A program made the translations under genes and the position numbers. From the NCBI GenBank assembly GCA_002269645.1, contig NIVC01003268.1:44001-108000 (forward strand): a stretch of 64,000 bases of DNA, written 5' to 3'. The notes beneath the pieces are model-generated. The model saw only the letters and a program-made list of their open reading frames with translations. It made no database searches and had not been told where the DNA came from. Below are positions 4,740-38,665 of this stretch, piece by piece; positions within the stretch are counted from its first letter, which is position 1; each line of letters starts with the position of its first letter. This stretch comes from Macrostomum lignano. Its lineage: Eukaryota.

Positions 4740-5005
4740 TTTAGTTAAGCTTAGTTTAGTTTAGTTTAGTTTAGTTTAGCTTAGTTTAGCTTAGCTTAGT
4801 TTAGTTTAGTTTAGTTTAGTTTAGTTTAGTTTAGTTTAGTTTAGTTTAGTTTAGTTTAGTTTAGTTTAGTTTAGTTTAGTTTAGTTTAGTTTAGTTTAGT
4901 TTAGTTTAGTTTAGTTTAGTTTAGTTTAGTTTGTTTAGTTTAGTTTAGTTTAGTTTAGTTTAGTTTAGTTTAGTTTAGTTTAGTTTAGTTTAGTTTAGTT
5001 TAGTT
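4740..5005. repeat. (GTTTA)n pentamer microsatellite
   Basis: Direct reading; truncates the Gypsy relic in the protease region. Confidence 0.97.
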
Positions 5006-6365: not shown

Positions 6366-9300
6366 ATGCAGCTCTTTCAGTTGCGAGTTTCTGCAGCGTT
6401 GGCTCTGCTGTTCTGCTTCTTCTTCTTCTTCTTCTTCGGGCGTGCTCGGGCCAGGGCCCATGGCACCGGGCGTCAGATGGCGCCCGCCTTCCCGAGGAAG
6501 TTCAACACCGCGACGCAGTTCTCGAAAACTGCCGCGGGCTCCGGGCTTGGCCCCCAGAGGCGGCAGCGGTGAGATGTCAGGGCGGGGCAGGAGATCAGCA
6601 GATGGGCCGCCGTCTCCTCTCCATCGCCACAGAAGCGGCAGGTGGGGGCCACGTCATCGCCGATGGCGGCCTGGAAGCCCCGCAGAGCCGGGCAGCGGTC
6701 GGCGCGCAGCTGGCAGATCAGCCGCTCCTGCCGCCGCGTGGGGTCGCTCGTCGGCGGAGGCGGCAGGCGGCCCGCCGTGCAGGCAAGGTGCCAGGCAAGC
6801 GAGCTCGTGCTCACCGCCTCGGTGGCCGCCGCGTTGTAGATCTGGTGCCAGCGGGCGAGGCAGTGGCGGCGGACGGCAGCCTGCGCGGCAGCTAGCGGGA
6901 CGGGCGCGGTGCCTTGCGCCAGCGTGGTGCCTTGCTTGGCGATCGCGTCCACGGCCTCGTTGCCTGGGATTCCCGCGTGGCCAGGCACCCAGTGCAGGTG
7001 GACCGAGGTTCCCCGGGCCGCGAGGTCGGCGAGGCTGGCCCAGACGGCGTCGATCATGGTGGCACCCGTCGACCCGGGGGCGCTCAGGGAGTCGGAGCAG
7101 ATGCGGACCGGCGACAGCTCTGCCGGGTCCGGGGCCGCGAGCACCCACCGAAGGGCCTCAGCGATGGCCACTAACTCGGCGTGGAAGCTGGACGTCACAT
7201 GGCCAGCAGCGACGCACAGCGTCGTGTTGGGCTCGACCAGGACGCCACTGCCGCCGTCCAGGATGCCGTCCTTCGCCGCTCCGTCGGTCCAGATCACGGT
7301 GCTGGCGGGCGGCAGGGCGGCAAGCGTCTGCTGCGCCGCGGCTCTCCGGGCCTCCGGCAGGTCCCCCCGCGAGGTCGGGGAGGCCAACTGCAGCCCGAGG
7401 GTGACGGAGTCCAGAACAGCCCAGGGAGGTGTCGTCGGGACAGCGTGGACGGGCTCTCGCGGGAAGCCGCTCAGGCCCGCAGCTCTGCATACACTGGCCG
7501 CCGTCTCGCGCCAGCCGCGGGCGCTTTGGAGGCGGCGGCGCGGGCCGACGCTGGCCGCGCCGGCGCGCAGCGGGTTGTCATGCGGCAGCCTGAGGGCGCG
7601 CTCATGGAGGAGGCCAGCGTGCATCTCCTCGCGGACTGCCATCGGCGGCAATCCGGCCTCGCGCTCCAGCACCTCCGACCTGGTGTTCCAGGTGGTCGCT
7701 GCTGTTCTGCTCGCTGGCAGCCGGCCAGGTCTCCCAGTGCGCTCCCGCTGACTCTCCGCGGCCCCGCTTCGTGGCGCAGCTCAGCGTGAACGGCTGCGCG
7801 CTGTTCGTACACGACACGGGAGCGAGCGACGGTCCGCACTCGGCAGTCGAGCCGCTCATGTGCGTGACGGACAGCCTGAGAGGCATTGTTCCCCGATTCG
7901 ACTTCATCACCCAGCAGCTGTACTCCAGCGTTCCTGTATTGATGAGGGATGCTGGGATGCTCGCAGAGGCTCAGCGTCAACTGCGGCATCTGTCACCGAG
8001 GTCTGTGAGCTTCGCCACGGTGACCAACATCAGCGTCTCAGCCGACACCCGCTCATCGGTTCGGGTTTTGAGCTTCCTGTGGACTCCGGATGAGCCAGTA
8101 GCCACTATGAGATTCGGATTTGGAGAGAAGATCCGATATGAAGTTCTACATCTCCGAGAAAACATCATTCTAAGACTTCTGAATATCGATCCAATGAGAA
8201 CCTTACTAATTCAAAGTACCCAGACGCGGATCGTCGAGAAAAATAATGAAAGTTCAATAATCGAGACTCTAAAAAATGTAAAACTCTCAGCTACTCTTCT
8301 GTTGAGTTTCTGTTTCCATGAGGGTCAGAGCCGCATCATGCTGCAAAACGACAGCTTCATTGAAGTCGGCTTGTGCAGGAAAAAATTCTTACCCGTGTGC
8401 CGACAGCTGCGGTTCAGTCGGTACGTCAAACTTGAGAACTGCTCTGTCCGAGTGCACGAGACGCTCGACACGATGGGCCACTTCCTCATCGAGCCTCTGC
8501 TGTGCCACAACATCTCCAGCTTGAGCAGCGAGTCAGTCAGGTATGACTACAGCCGAGACATGCACTACCTTAAGCTGGATCTGGTGCTGCAAGATGAGGC
8601 CACACGCGATGCTGTGAGGACTCAGTTGGCCGACTTGTCGCCTCGCTCGGTCGACTTCATGCGGCTGTGGACTGCTGAGAGATCGGTGAGCTCTTCGTTG
8701 AGTGCTCGGTTCGAGGTCGGTCCGCTGATGGCGGCGGCAGACTGGAGGTCCGCTCAGCTGCGGCTGCTCTTCTCTCCTATCTCTCCTCCTTTCTCTCTAT
8801 TCTTCCATCTCTAATCTGTTCACTCTCGTCTCTGCTCTGCACTCTTTTCTTTCCCCACTTTTGACTGCTAATTTTCCTTTCTTCTCTTTTATTCTCTTCC
8901 CTCTTCTATACTCTCTCTCTAAAAAGCAGCCTAACTTTAAAAGCGCACATCGCTGTTCAGGATTAACCTTTGAACTTGAAATTTCACACGATTGTGTTAC
9001 AGATTATTGTCTGTGTCAAACTTAAAGAGGATTAATAAAAGTAGAGCGGCGCTAAGGAGGATTTAGTGAAAAATCCTGCTTTTCTAGCAGTTTTTTGCTT
9101 TTTTGAGTAGAAAGACTTAGACTTAGGAAATTTTAAGGTAAGCCTAAGACATTCTCCGTAGTGAGTTCAGGGTGGGTGCAAAAATTGGTTTGATTTGCTT
9201 GAGCGGTTTGGGAGTCCATAGCGATCAAAATTGTACACAGACAGACACACAGACAGACACAGACAGAGTTTTGATTTTTATAGGTGTAGATAGAAGATTT

Positions 9301-12250
9301 TGCGGCTGCTAGGTGTCAAGCTGTACATTTTCAAATGTTTCGGCAGGTAAGCGAACAGATATTAAGACCTGCTAACTTAGGAATCAGAATTCAGAACTGA
9401 TACAGTTGCATAGTGGCTCCAAGGCGCTGTTTATAGATACCAAATTTGAGTCTCCAGTTGAGTTATTGGTACAGCGGTACTCAAATATTGCCTAAGAATA
9501 GCCTTTTGAAATTCAGAAGCAATCTTCTCAAAAATACGCATTTCTAGCTGTCGTATCGAAAGATTTATGGAGTTCACTCGCTGTTTTATTTTTATCGATT
9601 GACTGACAATACTTCATTGAAACGTGTGCGTTCTTTTAAGTTTAAGCTGCCGGACGGTCAGCTGAGCTGACCATGGACCAACAGCCTTTTCTGGTGGTAA
9701 TTTTTTGTAGTCAATGGTAAAAGAAAAATGATGTAGACGTTCCTGCCGAGCATGGTCAGCAGCACTGAACATTTACGAAAAATGGGTGAAAAACTTATCT
9801 GCAATGGAATGCAGCGACTCGGTTTCAGCATTCTCAGTGATGACATCATCAGTCTCAGAATCGGATGTATGCAAGATTTCTATGGTTGTAGCTGATTCAC
9901 TTATCAATAAAATGATGCACTACTCGTATTAAACCCCGAAAATGCGGTGGCCTGCTCTGCAGGCCATAGCTAATGGTCTATGGCTTGCGAATCATTTGAA
10001 TGCTGTTTCGAAAATAAGTCTGCATAACCGTAGCTTGCGGCTTTGGCCTGCTCAGCAGGACATGCCTATTTTTTATACAGAAAACATTTGTGAATCACAG
10101 TCAACGAGTCTTTCTATCGAGCATTAAGATTCCAGCAATAGTCTATAACTAGCCCAGCTGACCATTTCGGCAGGAACGGAGCTTTTGTATTTCTAGCTCC
10201 GGCGCAAATAGGTTTTAAACACTGCCTTTGTCTTTGACGCATTTTAGCTAAAACCGTTTGTAAATCGATCATGCCATTTAAAAATGGCAACGTTTAAAAG
10301 TAGACAAAGTTGACTTGTAATGTGTCAATCTGTTGCACATCTTATCAAGGACAATTTCTTTTCAGAAAGACATGGCATTTCTGGCTCAATCGTCAAACAA
10401 ATAGTATTTTGCGTACATATGAAGTGAGATTTTGAATTCATTCGAAAGACGTATTTTAAATGCGTGCTCATTTGTATTTTTGTTCTTGTCATTCCTTCGT
10501 AGCCCTGTGCCGTTTAAACAAGTAATTGACGACTTCCAGGACTGCTGTGCTGGCGGAGCCCGCTGACCTGTGGCGACACGTGCAGTGGCGGGTGACATCG
10601 CTGGTTGCTGGGCAGTGCCTCTCCAAGTCCAGCCAAATCACTTCATCATGGAGAATGACACCGCCTGTAAGCGACAGCTGCTACAGTCTGAAGTCCTGCG
10701 CCAGGCTGCAATGCGCCTCTGCTCAACGCACAGCGAACTCTTCCAGTGCGGTTCAACTGCAGCCAGACGGTCGCTGCTTCGTGAAGTTTCAGCAGCGACT
10801 TACTGGCAGAGTGAGTTTTCAGCGAAACTGGACTGAGTACGAGACTGGGTTCGGTGACGGCACTGACTTCTGGATCGGTGAGTGGCTTGTCAATTGATGT
10901 GCGTCAGGAACTGAAGCAGGTCTTATCAACTGCCATAGGAGTGTCATTTAGGCCGTACAATCAATAACGTTCGTTGGTTGGTGGCTGTGGAAATTTTACG
11001 CTCGTAGTTCTTCGGACCGCCCTGCAGCTAAGTGGAAATTTTAGCAAAACTTTTTTTCCTACATCTTTTCCAGCTTTTCGAAACTTGTATGTCTTTATCT
11101 TAAAAATCTGTATTTATATCCTAAGTAAGTAAGTATTCCTCTGTAGGCTCTGCGCTGAATTGGATGTCATGTTACAAACAAGTAATTATTCGTACGACGC
11201 TCGAATCCAACAAACAACAGCAACAACAAAGTACGCTGCCCAGCATGCAAGTCACAGTTAGAGCAGGGCGTGTCAGATGGCGCGTCCCAGATCTTGAGAG
11301 CAGACAAAGTTCGCCCCGTTGGCAGTGTCGAGCTCCCTGGCGTGGCATAGCATGCATTAAATTATTAAGCTGAATAAATGAAAATGTAAAATATAATCAA
11401 ATGCCTTAAAAATTTTAATTAACTGTTAAATAAACCATTCAATTAATTATCTAGAGGCACATTGATATAAAAGATCCAGCAAAGTTGCAAGTAAAAATGA
11501 TTCAAGTTTTTGTGCGACTCAACTTTAAATTTCTAACCCCACTGTCCCAATGCAAATTCTAGCCAAGCTTAAAATCAAAATATGAGGAGATAGGGCAGTC
11601 TGAGTGGAGAAGAGCAGATAAAAGGCCGTACAGCTGAAACATTGCCAGCTTCCAAGTGAGCTGCATCAATAGAATTCATTGGCGCCTCAATCCAGACTGC
11701 CTGGGCAAGTCAGGCCTAAAATTATGGAAAATATATTTTCATCAATTTTGAGTCACGACTCACCTGACAGCAGCGGCGACAAGCCGAGCAGAAGTGACTC
11801 AGACTCAGCCACTCTCCTCCCGCAGGCCTCTCCGCCATCCACTCGCTCAGCCAGGGCGGCGCCACCCTCAGAGTGGAGATGAAGCAGTGGAACGGCTCTG
11901 AGCTGCATGCGGAGTACGCGGGATTCCAGGTGGGAGACGCCAGCACTGGGTATCGGATGACGTACCGAGAGATGCTGAGGGACAGGTCCAGTGTCAGCTG
12001 GGATGCTTTGCAGCTCAGCAAAGGCATGCGGTTCTCCACGATGGACAGGGACAATGACGTATGGGATGCTCAGTCATGCTCAAACACACTCGGAAATGCA
12101 GGCTGGTGGTTTCATTACTGCCGCCACTTCAACCCTAATGGATTTTATCCTTCGCAAGAAAGGATAGATATAATTGGCAATATGGTGTGGTACATTTCTT
12201 ATAGTAAGAAACTGTCTCTTCGTGAAGTGCGGCTGATGCTACAGATTTGA
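6366..12250 (+). pseudogene. Secreted fibrinogen-related (FReD) gene, copy 1: exon 1 6366-~8770 (interrupted by LINE), exon 2 10540-10877, exon 3 11826-12250
   Basis: Signal peptide MQLFQLRVSAALALL.. is split by the LINE. Exon 2 encodes FQQRLTGRVSFQRNWTEYETGFGDGTDFWIG. Exon 3 encodes FSTMDRDND..C..GWWF..C..FNPNG. The exon 1 donor is replaced by CT-rich sequence at ~8770. Confidence 0.88.
6418..7698 (-). mobile_element. 5'-truncated RNase H-bearing non-LTR retrotransposon (I-group-like LINE)
   Basis: ORF 6473-7672 has RNase H (WTDG..AELVAI..SDS..HWVPGHAGIPGNEAVD) and a C-terminal CRFC..ETAAHLLISCP knuckle. There is a (GAA)n tail at 6418-6437 and a 13-bp TSD CTGCTGTTCTGCT at 6405-6417 and 7699-7711. 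Confidence 0.93.
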
Positions 12251-13002: not shown

Positions 13003-13540
13003 TTGCTGTCTGTTCTATTAGTATTGTGCAGTCTGTTCTATCAGTATTGTGCTGTCTGTTCTATCAGTATTGTGCTGTCTGTTCTATCAGTATTATGCTG
13101 TCTGTTCTATCAGTATTGTGCTGTCTGTTCTATCAGTATTGTGCTGTCTGTTCTATCAGTATTGTGCTGTCTGTTCTATCAGTATTGTGCTGTCTGTTCT
13201 ATCAGTATTGTGCTGTCTGTTCTATCAGTATTGTGCTGTCTGTTCTATCAGTATTGTGCTGTCTGTTCTATCAGTATTGTGCTGTCTGTTCTATCAGTAT
13301 TGTGCTGTCTGTTCTATCAGTATTGTGCTGTCTGTTCTATTAGTATTGTGCTGTCTGTTCTATCAGTATTGTGCTGTCTGTTCTATCAGTATTGTGCTGT
13401 CTGTTCTATCAGTATTGTGCTGTCTGTTCTATCAGTATCGTGCTGTCTGTTCTATCAGTATTGTGCTTTCTGTTCTATTAGTATTGTGCTGTTTGTTCTA
13501 TCAGTATTGTGCTGTCTGTTCTATCAGTATTGTGCTGTTT
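13003..13540. repeat. 23-bp minisatellite array 2 (same unit as array 1)
   Basis: Direct reading. Confidence 0.98.
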
Positions 13541-14860: not shown

Positions 14861-15109
14861 TTTAGTTTAGTTTAGTTTTGTTTAGTTTTGTTTTGTTTTG
14901 TTTACTGTTTTAAGTTTTGTTTTGCTTTGTTTTGTTTTGTTTTGTTTTGTTTTGTTTTGTTTTGTTTTGTTTTGTTTTGTTTTGTTTTGTTTTGTTTTGT
15001 TTTGTTTTGTTTTGTTTTGTTTTGTTTTGTTTTGTTTTGTTTTGTTTTGTTTTGTTTTGTTTTGTTTTGTTTTGTTTTGTTTTGTTTTGTTTTGTTTTGT
15101 TTTGTTTTG

Positions 15110-15140
<31 letters not shown>

Positions 15141-15680
15141 TTGTTTGTTTTGTTTGTTTTGTTTGTTTTGTTTTGTTTTGTTTTGTTTTGTTTTGTTTTG
15201 TTTTGTTTTGTTTTGTTTTGTTTTGTTTTGTTTTGTTTTGTTTTGTTTTGTTTTGTTTTGTTTTGTTTTGTTTTGTTTTGTTTTGTTTTGTTTTGTTTTG
15301 TTTTGTTTTGTTTTGTTTTGTTTTGTTTTGTTTTGTTTTGTTTTGTTTTGTTTTGTTTTGTTTTGTTTTGTTTTATTTTATTTTTTTTGTTTTGTTTACT
15401 TTTTTAAGTTTTGTTTTGTTTTTTTTGTTTTGTTTTGTTTTGTTTTGTTTTGTTTTGTTTTGTTTTGTTTTGTTTTGTTTTGTTTTGTTTTGTTTTGTTT
15501 TGTTTTGTTTTGTTTTGTTTTGTTTTGTTTTGTTTTGTTTTGTTTTGTTTTGTTATGTTTTGTTTTGTTTTGTTTTGTTTTATTTTTTTTTGTTTTGTTT
15601 ACTTTTTTAAGTTTTGTTTTGTTTTGTTTTGTTTTGTTTTGTTTTGTTTTGTTTTGTTTTGTTTTGTTTTGTTTTGTTTA
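14861..15680. repeat. (GTTTT)n pentamer microsatellite
   Basis: Direct reading; starts with a few GTTTA units; same Gypsy breakpoint as 4740. Confidence 0.97.
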
Positions 15681-18308: not shown

Positions 18309-18316
18309 TATATAAA
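18309..18316 (+). promoter_or_regulatory. TATA box of FReD copy 2
   Basis: TATATAAA 80 bp upstream of ATG 18389; conserved in copy 3. Confidence 0.65.
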
Positions 18317-20214
18317 TGCAGCCATTTTACAGAATGCAGCTGCAATCCTCAGATTACCGATACAACAACGAAAGGCGAACTTGACTCGATGCAGCTCTTT
18401 CAGTTGCGAGTTTCTGCAGCGTTGGCTCTGCTACTCTGCTCGCTGGCAGCCGGTCAGGTCTCCCAGTGCGCTCCCGCTGACTCTCCGCGGCTCCGCTTCG
18501 TGGCGCAGCTCAGCGTGAACGGCTGCGCGCTGTTCGTGCACGACACGGGAGCGAGCGACGGTCCGCACTTGGCAGTCGAGCCGCTCATGTGCGTGACGGA
18601 CAGCCTGAGAGGCATTGTTCCCCGATTCGACTTCATCACCCAGCAGCTGTACTTCAGCGTTCCTGTATTGATGAAGGATTCTGGGATGCTTGCAGAGGCT
18701 CAGCGTCAACTGCGGCATCTGTCACCGAGGTCTGTGAGCTTCGCCACGGTGACCAACATCAGCGTCTCAGCCGACACCTGCTCATCGGTTCGGGTTTTGG
18801 GCTTCCTGTGGACTCCGGATGAGTCAGTAGCCACTCTGAGACTCAACTTTGGAGAGAACATTCGATATGAAACTCTACATCCCGAAAACATTGTTCTAAG
18901 ACTTCTGAATATCGACTCAATGAGAAACTTCCTAAATCAAAATACCCAGATGCAGAGTCGAGAAAACAAAGAAAATTCAACAATCGATGCTCTTAAAAGG
19001 GTGAAGCTCTCAGCTACTCTTCTGTCGAATGGTTGTTTCCATGAGGCTCAGAGCCGCGTCATGCTGCAAAACGACAGCTTCATTGATGTCAGCGTGTACA
19101 AGCAAAAATTCTTACCCGCGTGCCGACAGCTGCGGTTCACTCGGTACGTCAATCTCGAGAACTGCTCTGCCCAAGTGCACCAGAGACTCGACATTGAGGG
19201 CCACTTCCTTATCGAGCCTCCGCTGTGCCACAACATCTCCAGCTTGAGCAGCGAGTCAGTCAGGTATGACTACAGCCGAGACATGCACTACCTGAAGCTG
19301 GATCTGGTGCTGCAAGATGAGGCCACACGCGATGCTGTGAGGACTCAGTTGGCCGACTTGTCGCCTCGCTCGGTCGACTTCATGCGGCTGTGGACTGCTG
19401 AGAGATCGGTGAGCTCTTCGTTGAGTGCTCGGTTCGAGGTCGGTCCGCTGATTGCGTCGGCAGACTGGAGGTCCGCTCAGCTGCGGCTGCTCTGCGGAAA
19501 CTGGACGGAGTGCCGCGATCTCAGGTTGGCTGACATTTTGTTATAGGTTGAAACCTTTGAAGACTTTATCTTTCGTTTACCGTGATTTTATATTTTATAC
19601 TTTTGCTTTCAAGCTGCTCTTCTCTAAACACGTCATTATGAGTTTTGTAGTGAGATTAAAAAAACTTTTTAGTATCAGTTTGGAAGAAGAGTAAATTTAA
19701 GTCTGTAAGTTTCAGGTGGCCCGAATTTATGACGTTAAAACACACAAGCACAAATAGCATCGTTTTATAGTTTATAAAATAATTGCATGTTAGCGGCATA
19801 TTTACTATTTACCACATATACCCAAACTATAATATTTTACATTATTTACCATTACTTGCTTTCGACGCCGCTTGCTTGTTTGACTTTATCTATTTATTTA
19901 TTCTTAGCACTGTGCCGTTTACAAAAAACAATTGACGACTTCCAGGGCTGCTGTGCTGGCGGAGCCCGCTGACCTGTGGCGACACGTGCAGTGGCGGGTG
20001 ACTTCGCTGGTTGCTGAGCAGTGCCTCCTAAAGTCCAACCGAATCACTTCATCATGGAGATACAGTCTGAAGATACAGTCAGCTGCTCCAGTCTGAAGTC
20101 TTGCGCCAGGCTGCAATGCGCCTCTGCTCAACGCACAGCGAACTCTTCCAGTGCGTTTCAACTGCAGCCAGACGGTCGCTGCTTCCTGAAGATTCAGCAG
20201 CGACTTACTGGCAG

Positions 20215-22648
20215 GGCTGCGGTTTGCGCTAGGCTTGCCTTGAGCAAACCGGCTTTAGTGCCCAAGTGCGCTGCGTCTGTGGTGCGCCCCCCCCCCGCCG
20301 CGTGTGTACGTTCTGTGTTGTTTAGGTGGGTGCCCACCCCTCCGCCGGTGGGGGGGGGGGTATTTTACTCCAGCCGCGCTGCTGCGTTGGCAGTGTTTTC
20401 GCGCAGTTCAAGAGGTTGCCCGAGGAGAAGGCGAGGAACCTCGCTGAGTTGTTAGCATCTGAAAGGAGCAAAACCAGGATCAGCAAGCGGGCTTTGCAAC
20501 GCTTGATCGGCAAGCTTGGCTGGGCAGCACAGGTGATTCGCAAAGGAAAAACTTTTCTGCGTGATCTGATCGAAGTGTGCAACGCTATGCGGCCTGACGA
20601 GAGAATTAAAGTCAGCTTACAGCTCTGTGACCAATTCTGCTAGTGGATTGTAGCGCTGGAGTCGGCCCGGTGGGTGGAGCTCTGGCCTGTTTTCAAGAAC
20701 CATGTGGCCATCGAGTCCGATGCATGTGGCAGAGGCGGGGCAGCGGTGCTTCGAAGGTCAGATGGCAGTTGGGACTGGTGCTACATCAATTGGAGCCAGG
20801 ATGGGGCCGGAGTGTTCGCTGATCTGCCAATCAACTACAAAGAGGCGGTGGCTCCTTTGCTGTCAATCCTGCGCTGGAGGGAAGAGCTGAAAGGCTGTAA
20901 CGTTAGCGTTTATTGTGACAACATGGCGGCCTGTCATATTATCAATAATGGCACTTCGAGGTGTCCTGTCGTGCAGAGGCTACTGCAAACGATTGCGTTG
21001 ATGTCTTTACGGCATGGTCTGAGTGTGCGAGCCTTTCATGTGCCGGGAGAGTTTCAAATTCTCGCCGATGCAGCGTCTCGGTTGCACGAGCGCAGTCAGT
21101 TGATTATTTTTTATTTCGCTGCTATGGCAACTTGTGCCCGTTTGCTTTGCAATCAATGCATCGACATGCTTTCTGCCCTGCCTCTGCCCACTTTCTTCAT
21201 TTTCAGGCCGTCCAGCTGCGCCAGACTCTCTCAGCCGCCGGGCCGCGTCGCTGCTAGGCGTCTCTTATGCACCACGGTCAAGGCAGGCGGTGGCGAGGCA
21301 CATCCGTGAGTGGCTAGCTTACTGCAAGCAGACCCGCTGCAGTCCTGTATCCTGTCCGCTGAACAGCCTGCTCGACTACCTGGCCAGCCTAGTCGGGACG
21401 CGTTTGCGTGCGTACGGCAGCGTTGCTTCTGTCGCCAGCTGGCTGTCCGTTTGGTTTCGCGTCAACTCTGCACCAGACCTGACGAAGCATGCCGCAACGA
21501 CTCTCCTCCTGCGAGGTGCCAAGCGAGAGCTGGGACTTCGGGTGTCGAGAAAACGACCAGTATCGCCGCTCATGTTGTCGGAGATTCATCAGCGAGTCAG
21601 TCGTTCTGACGGGCTTCAGCTGGCATGCTGGGCAGTCGCCATCTGCTGTTGGTGGGGCATGCTCCGAAAATCCAGCGTGCTACCGACTTCGGGAAAAGGT
21701 CCGGCACGTGTGCGCTGCGCTGACATCTTTCGACACCCGCGAGGTCTGATCTTGCGCCTGGAGCAAGGGAAGACTCTCCAGTTCAAAGAGCGGGTGCACC
21801 AGGTGCTTCTACCAAGGCTAGTGAGGCGGACGTCGCTGTGCCCGGTGTTAGCAATCGAGCAGCACGCAAGATTCAATAATCTGCAATCGGCTGATGCGCC
21901 TCTGTTCACTTATCGCGACGCCGGAGGCAACCAGCGGCTGCTGACAGGCAGGCAGCTCGATCGCTTCCTAGCGGACAAGCTAGGGGCTGCGGGCTTCAGG
22001 CGTGAGCACTTCTCAGCCCACAGCCTCCGCCGTGGCGGCGCGACCTGGGCCTCGGTGTTGGGTGTGCCGGTGCCCGACATCATGCGGATCGGTGACTGGA
22101 AGAGCGACTCAGTGCAGCGGTATCTCCCGCAGTCGCAGCAGGGCTTGGCAGCTTCCGTCGTGTTTGCTAGAGGTGTGGGATCCCTCGTTTGACGTTGGCA
22201 TCAGCTTTACGATGTTCCGTTTCCTTCAATTTTTTCTTTCGCGCGCTTTCCCGTTGTTGTTTCGGCTTTGGAGGCCTCGTTACTGCTTTCGCTTTCGCCA
22301 ACATCGCGTATTCGTGTTTTGCTTTGGGGCACTAAGGCTGCGGTTTGCGCTAGGCTTGCCTTGAGCAAACCGGCTTTAGTGCCCAAGTGCGCTGCGTCTG
22401 TGGTGCGCCCCCCCCGCCGCGTGTGTACGTTCTGTGTTGTTTAGGCGGGCGCCCACCCCTCCGCCGGTGGGGGGGGGGTATTTTACTCCAGCCGCGCTGC
22501 TGCGTTGGCAGTGTTTTCGCGCAGTTCTTTTTTTTTTCTTCTTCTTTTATCCTTATTCTTTTAATCAATAAAATATAAATAAAGAGGCCTCGTTACTGCT
22601 TTCGCTTTCGCCAACATCGCGTATTCGTGTTTTGCTTTGGGGCACTAA
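20215..22648 (+). mobile_element. Ngaro-type tyrosine-recombinase retrotransposon A, internally deleted (no gag or RT core)
   Basis: Split direct repeats A1 20215-20409, B1 22271-22335, A2 22336-22527, B2 22584-22648. RNase H 20326-21309 (ESDA..INYKEA..YCDN..ADAASR, one in-frame TAG). YR ORF 21134-22192 (R..K..HSLRRGGA..GDW.S..Y). No TSD. Confidence 0.93.
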
Positions 22649-23046
22649 AGTGAGTTTTCAGCGAAACTGGACTGAGTACGAGACAGGCTTCGGTGACGGC
22701 ACTGACTTCTGGATCGGTGAGTGGCTTGTCAATTGGTGTGCGTCAGGAACCGAAGCAGGTCTTATCAACTGCCAAACGAGTGTCATTTAGGCCGGACAAT
22801 CAATAACGTTCGCTGGTTGGTGGCTCTATCAATTTTAGTGCCTCCATTTCTCTTAGGCTCTTTGTGAGCCTGGAGTGAAATGGGTGTTAGCCATCCACCC
22901 CTCGCACTGTACATTGTGCCGCCTTTGTGCTCCGTCCTCTCTACCCCCGTGGGGTGGGGGGGGTTTGCTCACCCGCTTATTTATTTGCACGCCGCCTTCT
23001 GTGCCCCGTCGCTCGCTTTGGCTTTGCAGCTCAAAATTTTACCATT

Positions 23047-24111
23047 ATGGAAAGTGCACGCAATTTTACAACTAAACAGCTCAAACAAGAGCTAGCTCAG
23101 CGAGGCCTCTCACAAGCTGGTCGTAAACAACAACTCTATGAGCGTCTACACAGACACCTGTGTGCTATGTCTGAGTATCCAGCTGCAGCAAAAAGTCACG
23201 ACGCAAGCCTCAACTCAGGCACCATCGACGGTGGACATTCGACGGGTGGACACGGAGCTTCAGGGAGCGCGGCGAGCGACCTGGCGGCTCTGAGGAAGGA
23301 GGTCGAGCAGCTGGAGATTGAAGCCCTGACTCGGCGCCGCGCACAACTGCAAAGCGAGCTCAATCAGTCGCAGAACCACCGGTCTCAGGAACCTCCACAA
23401 CAAGGTGAGCGGAGAGAAAATGCTGGCTTGCATGAGGCGTTTTTGTTAGGCGGCGCTCTTACAGATCCCGGCAGAAGCCAGTGTGACAAAAAGACTAGCA
23501 GGGCTTATCTGATTCGCGATTTTGTCAAGCCCAGTTCAAATCAACCTAATGAGAGCCTCACAGCCTGCATGGAGAACGGCAACCTGGTCTTTAAGAAGCA
23601 GCCACCCAGCTTGGGGAAAATCTCTGTCGGCCAGTGGATTGCAGGGAACTCTAAGATTTTGCTTCGACTAGTTGATGATGGGTCGCTGATTCACATTAAT
23701 GAGGATGGATCTGTCAATGTTGACGAACTAAAAGGCTATCTGGAGTACTCACAGAAGATCGGCGAGCTCTTAGACGCTAACTACAGCCCAAGTGTCGTGT
23801 GGGAATTCGATGAGGATTACAGAAAGTTGATCGCCGACTCGGATTCGCATCGATGGGGCTGCGAGCCTCCACAGCTGTACCACCGACACCTTAATGCACC
23901 AAGAAACTTAAAAGTCACCCTAAGCAGACCAGCATCCAACCAGTCGCAAGCTCCCATCTGCCTAAGCTACAACTCCCCTGCCGGCTGCCAGCGGTCCTCC
24001 TGTAGGTACCGTCACGTCTGCAAGCTGCGCGACTGCGGCCGGCCGCACCCCGCACACCAGCACCGTCCGGCCAGCGTCGGCGGCGACGCTGTGGAGGGAG
24101 CAAAAAACTAG
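23047..24111 (+). CDS. Ngaro B gag-like protein with N-terminal SAP-like motif and C-terminal CCCH/CCHH zinc finger
   Basis: FTTKQLKQELAQRGLSQAGRKQQLYERL matches the SAP pattern; C-terminus CLSYNSPAGCQRSSCRYRHVCKLRDCGRPHPAHQH. Confidence 0.8.
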   Translation: MESARNFTTKQLKQELAQRGLSQAGRKQQLYERLHRHLCAMSEYPAAAKSHDASLNSGTIDGGHSTGGHGASGSAASDLAALRKEVEQLEIEALTRRRAQLQSELNQSQNHRSQEPPQQGERRENAGLHEAFLLGGALTDPGRSQCDKKTSRAYLIRDFVKPSSNQPNESLTACMENGNLVFKKQPPSLGKISVGQWIAGNSKILLRLVDDGSLIHINEDGSVNVDELKGYLEYSQKIGELLDANYSPSVVWEFDEDYRKLIADSDSHRWGCEPPQLYHRHLNAPRNLKVTLSRPASNQSQAPICLSYNSPAGCQRSSCRYRHVCKLRDCGRPHPAHQHRPASVGGDAVEGAKN

Positions 24112-24164
24112 ATCTTTTTTATAGCCGCCCTGCTTTTAACCCCCGTTCGCCGTCACCTTTTATC

Positions 24165-27664: not shown

Positions 27665-27905
27665 CTGTTTGAGGTTGAAGGCGAAGATCCGTAGGCTCTT
27701 CCTGTTTGAGGTTGAAGGCGAAGATCCGTAGGCTCTTCCTGTTTGAGGTTGAAGGCGAAGATCCGTAGGCTCTTCCTGTTTGAGGTTGAAGGCGAAGATC
27801 CGTAGGCTCTTCCTGTTTGAGGTTGAAGGCGAAGATCCGTAGGCTCTTCCTGTTTGAGGTTGAAGGCGAAGATCCGCAGGCTCTTCCTGTTTGAGGTTGA
27901 AGATT
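27665..27905. repeat. 37-bp tandem repeat, ~6.5 copies
   Basis: Unit CTGTTTGAGGTTGAAGGCGAAGATCCGTAGGCTCTTC; period 27665 to 27702. Confidence 0.95.
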
Positions 27906-27949
27906 CGCAGGTTTGCTGAGAGAGCTGCTGCTGGCTTCATGCACAGTTT

Positions 27950-28550: not shown

Positions 28551-30179
28551 CGCGCTCCTTTGTCAGTGAAACCAAATTGTTTCTGTCAAAGCGCGCTCGT
28601 TTAGTCAACTGCGCGCTCGTGTCCCAAAAAATATTCAGACGACGCGTTTGAGTATTCCGCCAGTTCAACCCTGCAATTATGAATTGGGATGTTGCATTTT
28701 TTATAAGAACGCCACCTCGAATTTTTTAATTGAATGACAGCATTTGCATCCCCAAACAGGACACCAGCCCACGCACGCAGAGCCAAGCACTCCCCCCATC
28801 TGTCCGCGCTCTGTTGGGGGAGAGAGAACGAAACCAAAATGACACTAGCAGGACAAAGGAGTAAAAATTGGTTAGGGACTTGTCGAAGCCATTCACAGAC
28901 CAGCATATACTCGCCTACAATCCTATATACATAAATGATGACCCGCTCTTAAGTATATTCAATGTTGAAACTCTGAGCTTTCAAAGAAAGGGCAGTCTGA
29001 GTAGAGGAGCAAAAAGACCGTCCAGCTGAAATATCACCAGCTTTCAAGTTGGCTGCATAAGCAGAGGTCATTTGCGCATTAATCCAGATTTTCAGCACGA
29101 GACATGTTAAACGCTTAACATAATTTATATGCACTTTTGTTATGCAACACCTTTTGCGTGTTCATCAGCATCCAAATTTCGACTTACCTGGCAGCAGCGG
29201 CGACAAGCCGAGCAGAAGTGACTCAGACTCAGCCGCTGTCCTCCCGCAGGTCTCTCCGCCATCCACTCGCTCAGCCAGGGCGGCGTCACCCTCAGAGAGG
29301 AGATGAAGCTGTGGAACGGCTCTGAGCTGCATGCGGAGTACGCGGGATTCCAGGTGGGAGACGCCAGCACTGGGTATCGGATGACGTACCGAGAGATGCT
29401 AAGGCACAGGTCCAGTGCCACCTTTGACGTTTTGGAGCGCAGCAAAGGCACGCAGTTCTCCACGATGGACAGGGACAACATCAAAGAGAGAAGTCCTTTA
29501 TGCTTCAAGTCTATAGGAAAGAGAGCCTGGTGGTTTGACAGCTGCTACTACTTCAACCCTAATGGACTTTTCCCTACGCGAGAAACAGTAGATTTTAGAT
29601 ATAATAATTTTAGGTATATGAGCTGGCGGCATGGCTCTGCCCGTCTGTCTTTTCGTGAAGTGCGGCTGATGCTGCAGATTTGAGCATCAAAACTTGAGCA
29701 ACTCAGTGGCCCACTCTGTTGACTCAAATACAATTTTTTCGGACTCTAGCTAGCCTGCTGCTACTTAATAATTTTAAAATATTTTTCAAAGTCTCCCTGA
29801 TTGCAAGAGTTTTGCTGACTGAAAAAACTCGTGCGCAAAAAAACTGTGAAACTGTGAAACTTACAACTTTTTGTAAGTTTAAACTTAATAAGCTCATTTT
29901 ACGTGTAAAAGACGCAGACTGTTTTCAACAATCAGCGTATTGAAAAAGGCGAACTATCGTAAGTCTGGAAATCTGTGTAACTCAAACGCAGAGACTTTGT
30001 TCGCAAATTTCTTTTCATCTTTAATTTTTTACACACGAATTTCTCACATATTGAAGCATCAGCTGAAAGCCTCAACGTTGTTGCTACAAGCGCATGAGTT
30101 TTTTCTGAAGTCTTGCTTTTCTGATACTGATAAATTCCCTATAGATGCCTGTGATTTGAGCCTATGTAAAGTGCTGCTT

Positions 30180-34117: not shown

Positions 34118-37100
34118 ATGCAGCTCTTTCAGTTGCGAGTTTCTGCAGCGTTGGCTCTGCTGCTCTGCTCGCTGGCAGCCGGCCAGGTCTCCCAGTGCGC
34201 TCCCGCTGTCTCTCCGAGGCTCCGCTTCGTGGCACAGCTCAGCGTGAACGGCTGCGCGCTGTTCGTGCACGACACGGGAGCGAGCGACGGTCCGCACTTG
34301 GCAGTCGAGCCGCTCATGTGCGTGACGGACAGCCTGAGAGGCATTGTTCCCCGATTCGACTTCATCACCCAGCAGCTGTACTTGAGCGTTCCTGTATTGA
34401 TGAGGGATGCTGGGATGCTCGCAGAGGCTCAGCGTCAACTGCGGCATCTGTCAGCGAGGTCTGTGAGATTCGCCACGGTGACCAACATCAGCGTCTCAGC
34501 CGACACCCGCTCATCGGTTCGGGTTTTGAGCTTCCTGTGGACTCCGGATGAGCCAGTAGCCACCCTGAGACTCGGCTTCAAAAGGATTGTTGTCAAGACC
34601 GATTCAAGTAAAGCTTCAGGTTCAAGAATTTTACAGGAAAGTTTACCTCTCCAGTTCTTTCAATCAGTGTATAACCAGCTGAAGCGCAGTGATGAGTTTG
34701 GAAGCTCACCACAAGAGGCTCTTGAAAAGGTGAAGATATCAGCTTTTATCATTTAAAACGGATCTTGTCATGAGGTTCAGAGCCGCGTCATGCTGCAAAA
34801 CGACAGCTTCATCGAAGTCGGCTTGTACAGGAAAAAATTCTTACCCGTGTGCCGACAGCTGCGGTTCATTCGCTACGTCAAACTCGAGAACTGCTCTGCC
34901 CGAGTGCACCAGAGACTCGACATCAAGGGCCACTTCCTCATCGAGCCTCTGCTGTGCCACAACATCTCCAGCTTGAGCAGCGAGTCAGTCAGGTATGACT
35001 ACAGCCGAGACATGCACTACCTGAAGCTGGATCTGGTGCTGCAAGATGAGGCCACACGCGATGCTGTGAGGACTCAGTTGGCCGACTTGTCGCCTCGCTC
35101 GGTCGATTTCATGCGGCTGTGGACTGCTGAGAGATCGGTGAGCTCTTCGTTGAGTGCTCGGATCGAGGTCGGTCTGCTGATGGCATCGGCAGACTGGAGG
35201 TCCGCTCAGCTGCGGCTGCTCTGCGGAACCTTTACGAAGTGCCGCGATCTCAGGTTGGTCGGAATTTTCTGAGGGGTTTTCAGCTTTTATTGCACCAGAT
35301 TCAAAAAAGAGTTTACTTTCTAGACTCTCTTTACTTCACAGGACTTCTTGAGTGTTTGCAAGAGTAATACAAAATCCCTTTTAGTGTCAGCTTGGTTGCT
35401 ATTGAGCGATCAGATCAGGCTATCAATGCTTTTGTATTGGTTTTTTTTTCTTTTTTAAACTTTTTCGGCGTTCAAAAATGGATTTGACAATATCCAGGTC
35501 TGCTGTGCTGACGGAGCCCGCTGACCTGTGGCGACACGTGCAGTGGCGGGTGACGTCGCTGGTTGCTGAGCAGTGCCACTCCAAGTCCAGCCAAATCACT
35601 TCATCATGGAGAATGAAAGCGTCTGAAGGTGCAGTCAGCTGCTCCAGTCTGAAGTCCTGCGTCAGACTGCACAGCGCCTCTGCTCCACGCACAGCGGCGT
35701 TTCAAATCCTGCCAGACGGTCGCTGCTTCGTGAAGTTTCAGCAGCGACTTACTGGCAGAGTGAGTTTCCAACGAAGCTGGACTGAGTACGAGACTGGCTT
35801 CGGTGACAGCACTGACTTCTGGATTGGTGAGCGGCGTTTGTGTATCAGCTAATATTGTGTGACGGAGGGTTGGTAGCAGATCTTGTTAATCTTATGGTGA
35901 AATTATGGTTGATTCATGCACTTTCAACTGACGTAATACGGACTGAAAGATTAACTGCCCGGCTAAATAAAAAAGTTAAGTTGAAATTGCGCCATGATGG
36001 CAATCGTCAACACTGGCCTTTTCCGCCTGATTGGCGTTTCGGGTCCTTGTTTTTGGTCCTTGGTTTTTTATACAGCTAGGACTATCAATGCCAAATAGTT
36101 TTTTTCAGATGACTAAAATGTCATCCAGGATTCATCAATGAAAAGTATTTGACACTCCGTCCAGACAACGAAAATGTCGAAAAATGGAAGTCCCAAAGCT
36201 ACTTTAAAGCATAAGGCAGTAGACAGCGGTTCAGTCCAGCCAGAGCAGCACCAGCCAGAGCAGCACCAGCTAGAGCAGCACCAGCCAGAGCAGCACCAGC
36301 CAGAGCAGCACCAGCCAGAGCAGCACCAGCCAGAGCAGCACCAGCTTCTACGAGTACAACCATCGTTGCAGTTTTTGCGTATATTTCTATGAAGTTTGCA
36401 TAAAAAACCTTGTTCCCCGACTCAAAACATTAGCTAGTAAATTTTGCGCTGTTCACGTCACGTATAATATTAATGGCCTCATGAGGCCTTATGATAGATA
36501 CATGGCGTACTTAAGAAAGGTTAGAACTTATTGACTTATTAAAAAAATCCAAAAAAAATTCCTTTCGTGCGCGCCCTTCTACGAGATATTTATCTGAGTC
36601 GCAGTCAAGTTTCCGAAGCGATGCATTCAGATGACATTTCGCTTCAGTCCTGGCCTGATACAATTAAAACCCGTCTTGAAGTCTCAGAACAGCCGGCCAC
36701 TCATCTGGGATATCAGAAGACTTTGAATGGATAATTTAGTCAGTAAACGAATTTAGCTGCACCATCTGCTATGGAACGCACATTGTAAAAAATTTATCTC
36801 AGGATCCAAATGACGAATCACCTGACAGCAGCGGCGACTAGCCGAGCAGAAGTGACTCAGACTCAGCCGCTCTCCTCCCGCAGGCCTCTCCGCCATCCAC
36901 TCGCTCAGCCAGGGCGGCGCCACCCTCAGAGTGGAGATGAAGCTGTGGAACGGCTCTGAGCTGCATGCGGAGTACGCTGGATTCCAGGTGGGAGACGCCA
37001 GCACTGGGTATCGGATGACGTACCGAGAGATGCTGAGGGACAGGTTAAATGTCAGCTATGTCGCTTTGGAGAACAGCAAAGGCATGCGGTTCTCTACGAT

Positions 37101-37302
37101 GGACAGGGACAATGACGTACACAGAGGAATCTCATGCTCAAACAGATGGGGAAAAGCAGGCTGGTGGTTTAATGCTTGTCTACACGTCAACCCTAACGGA
37201 CTTTTTCCTTCGCGGGAGACAACAGATGGCAGCTATATCGTCTGGAACTCTGGCTCTGTCTGGCTGCTTCTTCGTGAAGTGCGGCTGATGCTGCAGATTT
37301 GA
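34118..37302 (+). pseudogene. Secreted FReD gene, copy 3: exons 34118-35253, 35498-35826, 36884-37302 (627 aa if the TAA at 34754 is read as sense)
   Basis: Exon lengths 1136+329+419=1884 nt, phases 2 and 1 consistent, GT-AG sites. The only lesion is an in-frame TAA at 34754-34756. Confidence 0.88.
36235..36345. repeat. 15-bp repeat (CCAGAGCAGCACCAG)n, short array
   Basis: Direct reading; lies in intron 2 of copy 3. Confidence 0.95.
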
Positions 37303-38344: not shown

Positions 38345-38665
38345 ATCCAGGTAGGAGACGCCAGCACTGGGTATCGGATGACGTACCGAGAGATGCTGAC
38401 GGACAGGTCCAGTGTCAGCTGGGATGCTTTGGAGCTCAGCAAAGACATGCGGTTCTCCACGATGGACAGGGACAATGACGTATGGGATGCTGGTTCATGC
38501 TCCAATAAATATGGAAAAGGAGGCTGGTGGCTTAAACGCTGCCATCAATTCAACCCTAACTGACTTTATCCTTCAGGGGATTTAGCACATCACAGGAATA
38601 CGGTCAGGCACTCTGGCTCTGCCTATCGAACTTTTCGTGAAATGAGGCTGATGCTGCAGAGTTGA
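38345..38665 (+). pseudogene. Orphan 5'-deleted fourth copy of the FReD terminal exon
   Basis: QVGDASTGYRMTYREM..FSTMDRDND..GGWW..C..FNPN* ..REMRLMLQS; lacks the splice acceptor; in-frame TGA. Confidence 0.85.

What the first reader, a model, noticed from the sequence alone, without database searches (positions are those of the whole stretch)
18389..19524. Unrecognised tandem-duplicated domain fused to a fibrinogen domain: candidate new secreted recognition/effector family
Exon 1 encodes a signal peptide and two ~170-190-aa homologous halves. FVAQLSVNGCALFVH..HLAVEPLMC aligns with FTRYVNLENCSAQVH..HFLIEPPLC. RFDFITQQLYFSVPVLMKDSGMLAEAQRQLRHLSPRSVSF aligns with RYDYSRDMHYLKLDLVLQDEATRDAVRTQLADLSPRSVDF. 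I cannot assign it to Ig, collagen, coiled-coil or EGF, the usual FReD partners. From memory only and unverified, it loosely resembles an uncharacterised N-terminal region of some expanded Daphnia/rotifer C1q-type proteins, which would imply a shared effector module paired with interchangeable recognition domains.
Basis: partly seen in the sequence, partly recalled or inferred. Interest (0 to 1): 0.82.

Follow-up and report, generated by a model that had tools for sequence, protein, structure and literature searches.

The report
New repeat domain on flatworm lectins
The flagged stretch is the first exon of a now-disabled Macrostomum lignano (flatworm) gene; it encodes a signal peptide and two copies of an unclassified, disulfide-closed domain of about 170 residues. 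In intact sister genes these sit in front of a fibrinogen-type lectin domain. The domain is real and folds confidently, but its function is untested.

Summary
Window 18389-19524 is an open first exon encoding a signal peptide and two homologous units (BLASTP E=6e-11; profile-profile E=8e-10).

- **Unit:** it runs from Cys1 to Cys6 (about 160-190 aa), and the second unit continues about 27 codons into exon 2.
- **No known relatives:** no Pfam or PDB-sequence match. An AlphaFold model built from 35 aligned units is confident (pLDDT 93.6) but has no Foldseek neighbour in the PDB. One uncharacterised Medusavirus protein model resembles it.
- **Distribution:** an exhaustive HMM search of 1.84 billion representatives found 13 proteins. 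All those whose source is named are Macrostomum lignano; two have no organism named.
- **Architectures:** one or two units plus a fibrinogen-related domain (FReD), or six units plus a C-type lectin domain. The module does pair with interchangeable lectin domains, but nothing links it to C1q proteins.
- **The window's three tandem copies are all damaged.** The flagged copy has a frameshift and a 2.4-kb retroelement in exon 2. "Copy 3" has an in-frame TAA. Copy 1 has a retrotransposon in its signal peptide.
- **Evolution:** the paralogues show gene conversion around an old, hypervariable segment.

Most likely this is a lineage-specific secreted lectin family, analogous to snail FREP/CREP proteins. 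Its function is inferred, not shown.

The parts
18309..18316 (+). TATATAAA box upstream of copy 2. It is conserved before copy 3 and lost before copy 1.
   Evidence: Read directly from the sequence.
18389..18454 (+). Copy 2 (the finding): start codon and predicted signal peptide, aa 1-22.
   Evidence: Translation and coordinates. The composition is n-region, hydrophobic core, then AAG|Q. No predictor was run.
18455..18850 (+). Copy 2, unit 1 core (aa 23-154). It contains Cys1 (aa 27) and the Cys2-Cys3 pair (aa 46 and 68).
   Evidence: BLASTP and hhalign of the two halves; local HMM domain calls; Cys covariation.
18851..19000 (+). Copy 2, hypervariable segment of unit 1 (aa 155-204). It replaces the Cys4-x5-Cys5 and helix region of the canonical unit.
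   Evidence: Family alignment has no consensus here. DNA identity between copies is 35-63% here against 93-100% in the flanks. dS is 0.33-1.7 here against 0.05-0.08 in the cores.
19001..19036 (+). Copy 2, closing strand of unit 1 (VKLSATLLSNGC, aa 205-216; the Cys6 equivalent is at aa 216).
   Evidence: I matched this strand by eye to the closing strand of other units (VQWRVTSLVAEQC in unit 2), using the family alignment and the unit sequences. The unit-1 rows of the 35-unit alignment stop short of this strand, so that alignment does not cover it.
19085..19524 (+). Copy 2, unit 2, exon-1 part (aa 233-378). It holds Cys1 (aa 245), Cys2/3 (aa 259/280) and Cys4/5 (aa 369/375). Exon 1 ends in phase 2 at a GT donor.
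   Evidence: AlphaFold model of this unit: pLDDT 93.6, pTM 0.86.
19525..19945 (+). Intron 1 of copy 2 (GT...AG).
   Evidence: Splice sites and the homologous exon 2 in copies 1 and 3 and in L001.
19946..20024 (+). Copy 2, exon-2 part of unit 2 (R379 to Cys6 at aa 405: RAAVLAEPADLWRHVQWRVTSLVAEQC).
   Evidence: Unit alignment and model; Cys6 never occurs without Cys1.
20058..20096 (+). Copy 2 lesion 1: a 4-nt deletion at about 20058/20059 shifts the frame. A premature TGA follows at 20094-20096, so the product would be 428 aa, with both units and no FReD.
   Evidence: Alignment of exon 2 from the three copies and L001; spliced translation.
20215..22648 (+). Copy 2 lesion 2: a 2.4-kb insertion inside exon 2. 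It is a fragment of a DIRS-like retroelement with RNase H-like and tyrosine-recombinase ORFs.
   Evidence: Breakpoints. Pfam: RT_RNaseH and Phage_integrase, both weak.
22649..22706 (+). Copy 2, 3' remainder of exon 2 (start of the FReD: ...VSFQRNWTEYETGFGDGTDFWIG).
29250..29680 (+). Probable exon 3 of copy 2 (FReD P-subdomain). The reading frame is open but divergent (67% identity to P0001), and DRDND has become DRDNI. About 6.5 kb of intron, including a full DIRS-like element at 22927-26800, lies before it.
   Evidence: tblastn; translation; Pfam on the DIRS ORFs.
6366..8769 (+). Copy 1, exon 1. It is interrupted at 6418-7698 by a 5'-truncated non-LTR retrotransposon on the minus strand, with an RNase H ORF and a (TTC)n end. 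The insert is flanked by a 13-bp target-site duplication (CTGCTGTTCTGCT at 6405-17 and 7699-7711). The last ~27 nt of the exon and the donor are lost after 8769.
10540..12250 (+). Copy 1, exons 2 (10540-10879) and 3 (11826-12250): FReD, 95-97% identical to P0001.
34118..35253 (+). Copy 3, exon 1. It has an in-frame TAA at 34754-34756, caused by C>A at 34755. The GenBank assembly has TCA (Ser) there.
35498..37302 (+). Copy 3, exons 2 (35498-35826) and 3 (36884-37302 including the stop): rest of unit 2 plus the FReD.
38345..38659 (+). Orphan FReD exon-3 relic with an internal stop, downstream of copy 3.
   Evidence: The same relic is present in L001.

Best explanation
**What it is.** The flagged region is exon 1 of one member of a tandem cluster, in Macrostomum lignano, of a lineage-restricted family of secreted modular lectin-type glycoproteins.

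**Architecture of an intact family member.** Signal peptide, then unit 1, unit 2 and a C-terminal fibrinogen-related domain (FReD).

**The unit.** It is a previously unclassified alpha/beta domain of about 160-190 residues. Covariation of cysteine presence and absence implies that it is closed by a Cys1-Cys6 disulfide and stabilised by Cys2-Cys3 and Cys4-Cys5 pairs. The same unit occurs:
- once before a FReD;
- twice before a FReD;
- six times, after a mucin-like stretch, before a C-type lectin domain.

**Inferred mechanism.**
- The C-terminal FReD (or C-type lectin domain) supplies calcium-dependent carbohydrate or acetyl-group binding.
- The units form a rigid, glycosylated stalk or presentation scaffold.
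- In the window's subfamily, unit 1 has lost Cys4/5, and in many members Cys6. It carries a hypervariable 25-55-residue segment and an unpaired N-terminal cysteine, which could mediate oligomerisation.

**Family evolution.** Tandem duplication, gene conversion that homogenises the unit cores around old and very divergent variable segments, transposon bombardment, and pseudogenisation.

**The flagged copy.** It is itself disabled. It could encode at most a 428-aa FReD-less protein.

**Shown versus inferred.**
- Shown: the duplication, the unit boundaries, the absence of known relatives, the architectures, the taxonomic restriction, the lesions, and the mosaic divergence.
- Inferred: secretion, the disulfide map, lectin activity, the stalk or oligomerisation role, and an immune-type function.

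The confidence given is for the whole statement, including the inferred function. The descriptive part alone I would put at about 0.9.
For: - **Duplication:**
- **Unit boundaries and six-Cys pattern:**. Across 35 units, Cys2/Cys3 are both present in 27, both absent in 8, and discordant in 0. Cys4/Cys5 are 26/9/0. Cys6 never occurs without Cys1.
- **Confident fold:** pLDDT 93.6, pTM 0.86.
- **No known family:** Pfam, PDB profile search, Foldseek against the PDB with best E 0.099 and TM 0.2. The unit is not a degenerate FReD or C-type lectin domain.
- **Family size and taxonomy:** 13 representatives among 1.84 billion. All those with a named source are M. lignano; two have no organism named.
- **Architectures:** FReD or Lectin_C partners only.
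- **Canonical FReD:** Ca-loop motif STMDRDND and C...GGWWF..C; nearest solved relatives are the fibrinogen alphaEC domain, angiopoietin-like proteins and ficolin-1.
- **An intact paralogue exists:** P0004 is encoded by three exons at 100% identity in GCA_002269645.1.
- **Gene conversion:** dS is 0.05-0.08 in the cores and 0.33-1.7 in the variable segment. Copy 3 and its GenBank counterpart differ in patches that match other paralogues.
- **Lesions:**
Against: - There is no expression, localisation or binding data for any family member, and no paper mentions them.
- The signal peptide and the disulfide map are inferred, not computed with dedicated tools, and no model coordinates were available.
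- The FReD lacks part of the usual A-subdomain (Pfam profile positions 35-203 of 221), so ligand binding could be atypical.
- dN/dS in the cores is 0.5-1.4, but this rests on few substitutions and includes pseudogenes. It says little about constraint or positive selection.
- All three window copies are damaged, so this locus gives no evidence of current function.
- The AlphaFold DB was not searchable, so a structural relative among cellular proteins cannot be excluded. One viral predicted model does match.
Confidence: 0.55

Rival explanations
1. The N-terminal units, not the FReD, are the main variable recognition module. On this view the hypervariable segment of unit 1 is a diversified binding loop kept diverse by selection, while gene conversion shuffles the flanks. 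That would make the family a flatworm counterpart of the IgSF part of snail FREPs.
For: - Sequence and length hypervariability is confined to one segment between nearly identical cores.
- That segment has very old synonymous divergence (dS up to about 1.7) inside young flanks.
- There are at least five unalignable segment types among the paralogues.
- The architecture, one or two N-terminal domains plus a FReD, and a sister family with a C-type lectin domain, parallels FREP/CREP.
Against: - dN/dS in the segment is 0.4-0.6, not above 1.
- The same pattern is expected if conversion tracts simply stop where homology is lost in an unconstrained loop.
- More divergent family members (P0022, P0023, P0028, P0029) keep a short canonical Cys4-x5-Cys5 helix region there.
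- The segment had low model confidence.
- There are no binding data.
Confidence: 0.2
2. The family is structural rather than recognitive. The units would form a mucin- or SEA-like extracellular stalk in mucus, glycocalyx, adhesive or reproductive secretions, and the terminal lectin domain would merely cross-link matrix glycans.
For: - The six-unit protein from an unidentified organism (P0024) starts with a Thr/Ser/Pro-rich repeat (…TTDVPSATTDVPS…) followed by a long array of units with a period of about 195 aa.
- There are many N-glycosylation sequons.
- The second half of the unit has a beta-alpha-beta-beta-beta-alpha-beta order. From my own knowledge this recalls the ferredoxin-like SEA domains of MUC16-type mucins.
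Against: - There is no Pfam SEA match at E<=1 on any unit.
- No SEA chain appears in the PDB profile search or in the Foldseek top hits.
- Tandem clustering, conversion, variable segments and rapid pseudogenisation are more typical of recognition families.
Confidence: 0.2
3. The unit is not new. It is a very divergent member of a described extracellular domain family that the available tools could not connect.
For: - The AlphaFold DB and HHpred-type libraries could not be searched.
- The only alignment depth comes from one lineage.
- A predicted Medusavirus stheno protein model matches at E=4.7e-5 and TM 0.55, so the fold exists outside flatworms.
Against: - Pfam (24,736 models) finds nothing on 35 units.
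- The PDB profile search finds nothing.
- Foldseek with a model of pLDDT 93.6 finds nothing in 350,542 PDB chains.
- Exhaustive HMMER over 1.84 billion representatives found family members only.
Confidence: 0.15

Closest known systems
Biomphalaria glabrata FREPs and CREPs (the VIgL family: one or two IgSF domains plus a fibrinogen or C-type lectin domain). This comparison rests on my own knowledge of the literature.
   Same: - Signal peptide, then one or two tandem N-terminal domains, then a C-terminal FReD.
- A sister architecture with a C-type lectin domain.
- A clustered multigene family with gene-conversion-type mosaicism and many pseudogenes.
   Different: - The N-terminal domains are not IgSF: there is no Pfam Ig hit, the model contains four helices, and the Fab matches have TM of only 0.2.
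- The phylum differs.
- The signal peptide and both units lie in one exon, and unit 2 spans an intron.
- Up to six units occur in the C-type lectin form.
- No somatic diversification or immune role has been shown.
Ficolins, tachylectin-5, angiopoietin-like proteins and the fibrinogen alphaEC domain (solved FReD structures).
   Same: The C-terminal domain is a bona fide FReD. The best PDB matches are 1fzd, 6y41 and 2wnp at E of about 1e-21 to 1e-22. The Ca-loop D-x-D-N-D and the C...GGWW..C motif are conserved.
   Different: - There is no collagen-like or coiled-coil oligomerisation region.
- The A-subdomain is reduced.
- The N-terminal partner is the new unit.
Tandem SEA-domain arrays of MUC16-type mucins (from my own knowledge).
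   Same: Long arrays of 150-200-aa disulfide-containing alpha/beta units following a mucin-like region. The secondary-structure order in the second half of the unit is similar.
   Different: There is no sequence or structure match to SEA. The unit has an extra N-terminal beta subregion, six cysteines, and no G/SVVV autoproteolysis motif.
Uncharacterised protein A0A7S7YF07 of Medusavirus stheno T3 (BFVD predicted model).
   Same: It is the only structural neighbour found: Foldseek E=4.7e-5, probability 1.00, TM 0.55 (normalised by the query) over 181 columns.
   Different: - 15% identity, and rmsd 5.7 Å.
- It is a 417-aa protein of unknown function and is itself only a prediction.
- It was not retrieved by any sequence search, and its sequence could not be obtained here.

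Membership tests
Fibrinogen-related domain proteins (PF00147) | C-terminal domain scores above the Pfam gathering threshold for Fibrinogen_C. | tested here: met
   Copy 3 C-terminus: E=2.5e-36, 126 bits against a cut-off of 22. Relatives P0022-P0030 also match. PDB relatives at about E=1e-22.
Fibrinogen-related domain proteins (PF00147) | An intact FReD encoded by the flagged gene copy itself. | tested here: not met
   In copy 2, exon 2 has a frameshift and a premature TGA at 20094-20096, plus a 2.4-kb insertion at 20215-22648.
Snail FREP/CREP (VIgL) family | The N-terminal domains are immunoglobulin-superfamily domains. | tested here: not met
   No Ig-type Pfam hit on the exon-1 protein or on 35 units. 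The model has four helices. Fab matches have only TM 0.2 and E>0.09.
Snail FREP/CREP (VIgL) family | One or two N-terminal domains followed by a FReD, with a parallel C-type lectin form. | tested here: met
   Local HMM domain counts and Pfam partner domains.
Ficolins | A collagen-like Gly-X-Y region N-terminal to the FReD. | tested here: not met
   The translations contain no Gly-X-Y run.
   The exhaustive HMM search found 13 proteins. All those with a named source are M. lignano and two have no organism named. Partner domains are only Fibrinogen_C and Lectin_C.
SEA domain (PF01390) | A sequence or structural match to SEA. | tested here: not met
   No Pfam hit at E<=1 on 35 units. No SEA chain in the PDB profile search or among the top 50 Foldseek PDB hits listed.
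C-type lectin-like or FReD fold (the unit as a degenerate copy of its partner) | Profile-profile similarity of the unit to the family's own C-type lectin or FReD domains. | tested here: not met
   hhalign probability 0.1% (C-type lectin) and 0.7% (FReD).
Pore-forming toxin folds (aerolysin, MACPF and similar) | Structural similarity of the unit to a solved pore-former. | tested here: not met
   Foldseek against the PDB gave no match with E<=0.001.
New fold | No structural neighbour among all predicted cellular proteins (AFDB, ESM Atlas). | not testable with these tools
   Only the PDB and BFVD were available. BFVD gave one hit.

The most novel reading that the evidence does not exclude
The unit is a genuinely new extracellular fold that arose in, or is retained only by, macrostomid flatworms. 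It would play the role that IgSF domains play in snail FREP/CREP proteins. The FReD and C-type lectin proteins built on it would form a diversified innate-immune receptor repertoire. Their hypervariable unit-1 segment would be kept polymorphic by selection while gene conversion shuffles the flanks. That would be an independent invention of the "variable scaffold plus lectin" strategy.
Probability: 0.2. Interest if true: 0.75.

Novelty: new variant of a known kind. Interest (0 to 1): 0.5.

Why it matters
Modular secreted lectins (FReD or C-type lectin joined to a scaffold domain) are the main non-self recognition molecules of invertebrates. Free-living flatworms are regeneration and stem-cell models, and to my knowledge their immune recognition molecules are poorly characterised.

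This family shows that Macrostomum built such proteins on a scaffold domain that no database recognises. The domain is used in one, two or six copies and combined with two different lectin domains. It evolves by tandem duplication and gene conversion around a hypervariable segment.

If the family has a recognition role, it would be a second, independent example of the FREP/CREP design, and a tractable one because RNAi and transgenesis exist in M. lignano. Independently of function, the unit is a candidate for a new Pfam family and possibly a new fold.

For the flagged locus itself the practical message is more modest. All three copies here are pseudogenes or null alleles.

Tried and rejected
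1. **AlphaFold on the whole exon-1 protein with 11 close paralogues.** This gave pLDDT 49.5, and the Foldseek hits were meaningless. I replaced it with a 35-unit alignment, which gave pLDDT 93.6.
2. **The search for homologous proteins with the unit profile.** It returned only three fragments already known, because only the 8000 candidates sharing the most words were scored. It was uninformative about breadth.
3. **Literature searches.** Searches for Macrostomum plus fibrinogen or fibrinogen-related, and for six locus tags, found nothing relevant. The one M. lignano adhesion paper mentions fibrinogen only in passing.
4. **SEA-domain, C-type lectin, FReD-degenerate, Ig and pore-former readings of the unit.** None is supported.
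5. **Odd names on some cluster members.** Several carry names such as EST3, SHR-BD, CAP10 and PHM7_ext, and P0050 is a 1450-aa model with a transporter fragment. Pfam shows no such domains, apart from one sub-threshold sodium:dicarboxylate symporter fragment at the C-terminal end of P0050. I treat these as mis-named fragments or chimeric gene models, not additional partner domains.
6. **A small intron that might hide the copy-3 TAA.** I rejected this because the GenBank counterpart is translated straight through, with TCA at that codon.
Full report
**What is at the coordinates**

Window 18389-19524 (+) is an open 1136-nt stretch. It begins with an ATG 73 nt downstream of a TATATAAA box and ends at a GT donor. 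It encodes 378 residues:
- a signal-peptide-like start (MQLFQLRVSAALALLLCSLAAG|QVSQC);
- six N-glycosylation sequons;

tblastn of this product against the window finds three paralogous first exons, at 7696-8769, 18389-19522 and 34118-35251. Each is followed by exons that match a fibrinogen gamma C-domain query written from memory. The C-terminal part of copy 3 scores E=2.5e-36 on Pfam Fibrinogen_C. The exon-1 protein matches no Pfam family.

**Source organism**

Protein searches place the window in the free-living flatworm Macrostomum lignano. 21 proteins at 44-94% identity are all annotated only as "Fibrinogen C-terminal domain-containing" or "hypothetical". Window 30840-47330 is collinear at 97-98% identity with GenBank contig NIVC01003286.1 of assembly GCA_002269645.1.

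**Is the internal duplication real?**

Yes.
- BLASTP of residues 23-204 against 205-378 gives E=6e-11, with 29% identity over 125 residues.
- hhalign of the two halves as family profiles gives 96.5% probability and E=7.9e-10.

A local HMM built from both halves then delineated units in more distant relatives. The core is about 130 residues, and a less conserved tail follows it.

Aligning 35 units (mean identity 25%) shows six conserved cysteines. Their presence and absence covary:
- Cys2/Cys3 are both present in 27 units, both absent in 8, and never discordant.
- Cys4/Cys5 give 26/9/0.
- Cys6 never occurs without Cys1.

This implies disulfides 1-6, 2-3 and 4-5. It also sets the unit as the Cys1-to-Cys6 span of about 160-190 residues. 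However, unit 2 is not complete in exon 1; its last helix, strand and Cys6 (…RAAVLAEPADLWRHVQWRVTSLVAEQC) are encoded by the first 27 codons of exon 2.

**Is the unit a known domain?**

Nothing available says so.
- Pfam finds nothing at E<=1 that is shared by the 35 units.
- A profile search of all PDB sequences gives a best E of 0.7.
- The unit is not a degenerate copy of its partner FReD or C-type lectin domains (hhalign probability below 1%).

A first AlphaFold run on the whole exon with 11 near-identical paralogues was poor (pLDDT 49.5). With the 35-unit alignment, unit 2 of the flagged copy gives pLDDT 93.6 and pTM 0.86. The model has an N-terminal beta region, followed by beta-alpha-beta-beta-beta-alpha-beta and a closing hairpin.

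Foldseek of this model against 350,542 PDB chains finds nothing: best E 0.099, TM about 0.2, and no pore-former, lectin, Ig or SEA match. Against predicted viral structures there is a single credible hit, an uncharacterised 417-aa protein of Medusavirus stheno (E=4.7e-5, TM 0.55). The fold may therefore exist elsewhere. The AlphaFold DB could not be searched.

**Distribution and partner domains**

An exhaustive hmmsearch of the N-terminal profile against 1.84 billion cluster representatives returned only 13 proteins at E<=1e-3. All whose source is named are M. lignano. The two exceptions are a 148-aa fragment from a JGI/IMG contig with no organism named and a 1462-aa protein from SRA run SRR30276812.

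Architectures found:
- two units plus FReD: the window's subfamily, and P0022, P0023, P0028 and P0029;
- one unit plus FReD: P0030;
- six units with a period of about 195 aa plus a C-type lectin domain: P0024, P0035 and P0036 (P0026 is a 5'-truncated five-unit version). P0024 also has a Thr/Ser/Pro-rich repeat at its N-terminus.

P0024 is a 49%-identical orthologue of the M. lignano six-unit protein (P0036). It lies on a contig with an uninterrupted 4.4-kb ORF, and its source organism is not identified. No C1q partner and no Daphnia or rotifer relative was found.

**State of the genes in the window**

All three copies are damaged.
- **Copy 2 (the finding).** Exon 1 is intact, but exon 2 has a 4-nt deletion near 20058/20059 that leads to a TGA at 20094-20096. 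A 2.4-kb fragment of a DIRS-like retroelement is then inserted at 20215-22648. The rest of exon 2 lies at 22649-22706. A full DIRS-like element (22927-26800) sits in intron 2. A divergent exon 3 lies at 29250-29680. At most this copy encodes a 428-aa protein with both units and no FReD.
- **Copy 3.** It has TAA at 34754-34756. The GenBank counterpart has TCA there and encodes P0004 perfectly from three exons.
- **Copy 1.** A 1281-bp 5'-truncated non-LTR retrotransposon sits in the signal-peptide codons, flanked by a 13-bp target-site duplication. The copy has lost its TATA box, the last codons of exon 1 and the splice donor.

**How the family evolves**

Between window copies, exon-1 DNA is 93-100% identical in the unit cores. 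It is only 35-63% identical (copy 3 against copies 1 and 2) in about 240 nt that encode the tail of unit 1.

Synonymous divergence is 0.05-0.08 in the cores and 0.33 to about 1.7 in that segment. The contrast is therefore one of age, not of amino-acid selection. The cores are being homogenised by gene conversion around old, very different segments.

Consistent with this, the differences between copy 3 and its GenBank counterpart come in patches that match other paralogues. For example, IEVGLYRKKF against IDVSVYKQKF.

Across annotated paralogues the segment falls into at least five unalignable types of different length. In this subfamily unit 1 has lost Cys4/5, and often Cys6, which leaves Cys1 (aa 27) without its inferred partner. 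The second variable region of the family lies in the ligand-binding P-subdomain of the FReD.

**Interpretation**

The best-supported reading is a lineage-restricted family of secreted, glycosylated, modular lectin-type proteins.
- The FReD keeps the Ca-loop and the C...GGWW..C motif. Its closest solved relatives are the fibrinogen alphaEC domain, angiopoietin-like proteins and ficolin-1. This domain, or the C-type lectin domain, most likely does the binding.
- The new units most likely act as a disulfide-closed stalk or presentation scaffold, with a variable surface segment and possibly an oligomerising cysteine.

In design and evolutionary behaviour this parallels snail FREP/CREP proteins, but with a non-Ig scaffold. 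It is not a member of that family.

Rival readings cannot be excluded:
- the variable segment is itself the recognition element;
- the family has a structural mucus or secretion role;
- the unit has an undetected link to a known domain.

No expression, binding or literature evidence exists for any member.

**Verdict**

The domain is new to the databases searched, but the system is a new variant of a known kind (modular invertebrate lectins). The particular locus flagged is a cluster of pseudogenes or null alleles.

Noticed in passing
window 1-1793, 13004-13538, 30181-31028: Arrays of a 23-bp satellite (TGCTGTCTGTTCTATCAGTATTG; 23-78 copies, 92-97% matches) lie upstream of each of the three gene copies. 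The tandemly duplicated segment therefore seems to be satellite plus gene. Because 3 x 23 = 69, these arrays also produce long spurious ORFs.
   Followed up: partly
window 53453-63224 (- strand): A Polinton/Maverick-like element. The ORFs have weak Pfam matches to protein-primed type-B DNA polymerase (62139-63224) and to a double-jelly-roll capsid-like domain (54341-55627). Neighbouring large ORFs of unknown function lie at 53453-54331, 55691-56842 and 58306-59043.
   Followed up: partly
window 22927-26800 (+) and 20215-22648 (+): One apparently full-length DIRS-like retroelement has a gag-like ORF, an RT/RNase H ORF and a tyrosine-recombinase ORF. A second, partial copy is the insertion inside exon 2 of gene copy 2. 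The partial copy starts near facing C-rich and G-rich runs (20286-20298 and 20356-20367).
   Followed up: partly
window 6418-7698 (-): A GC-rich (about 67%) 5'-truncated non-LTR retrotransposon with an RNase H domain ORF and a (TTC)n end. It is flanked by a perfect 13-bp target-site duplication, CTGCTGTTCTGCT.
   Followed up: yes
window 1861-3948 (-): LTR-retrotransposon pol fragments: RT-RNase H, an integrase zinc-binding domain and an integrase core.
   Followed up: partly
window 36236-36345 and 37682-38064: The same 15-bp repeat (CCAGCCAGAGCAGCA and a rotated form of it) forms arrays in intron 2 of copy 3 and just downstream of that gene.
   Followed up: no
window 38345-38659; L001 14316-14630: An orphan FReD exon-3 relic with an internal stop lies downstream of copy 3. 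It is present in both this window and the GenBank assembly, so it is an old remnant of a further paralogue.
   Followed up: partly
window 14861-15679, 40037-40643, 4740-5011: Long microsatellites, (TTTTG)165, (ACAG)152 and (TTTAG)55, which produce long artefactual ORFs.
   Followed up: no
window 27664-28551, 48170-48937, 49931-50695, 51923-52748: Further minisatellite arrays with periods of 37, 67/132, 55, about 20-68 and 177 bp. Their origin is unknown.
   Followed up: no
L002 (SRR30276812 contig, 4758 bp), gene 199-4587: A 49%-identical orthologue of the six-unit C-type lectin protein sits on a contig with an uninterrupted 4.4-kb ORF, from an organism I could not identify. It is the only evidence that the domain exists outside the M. 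lignano assemblies, apart from a 148-aa fragment (P0027) on a contig with no organism named.
   Followed up: partly
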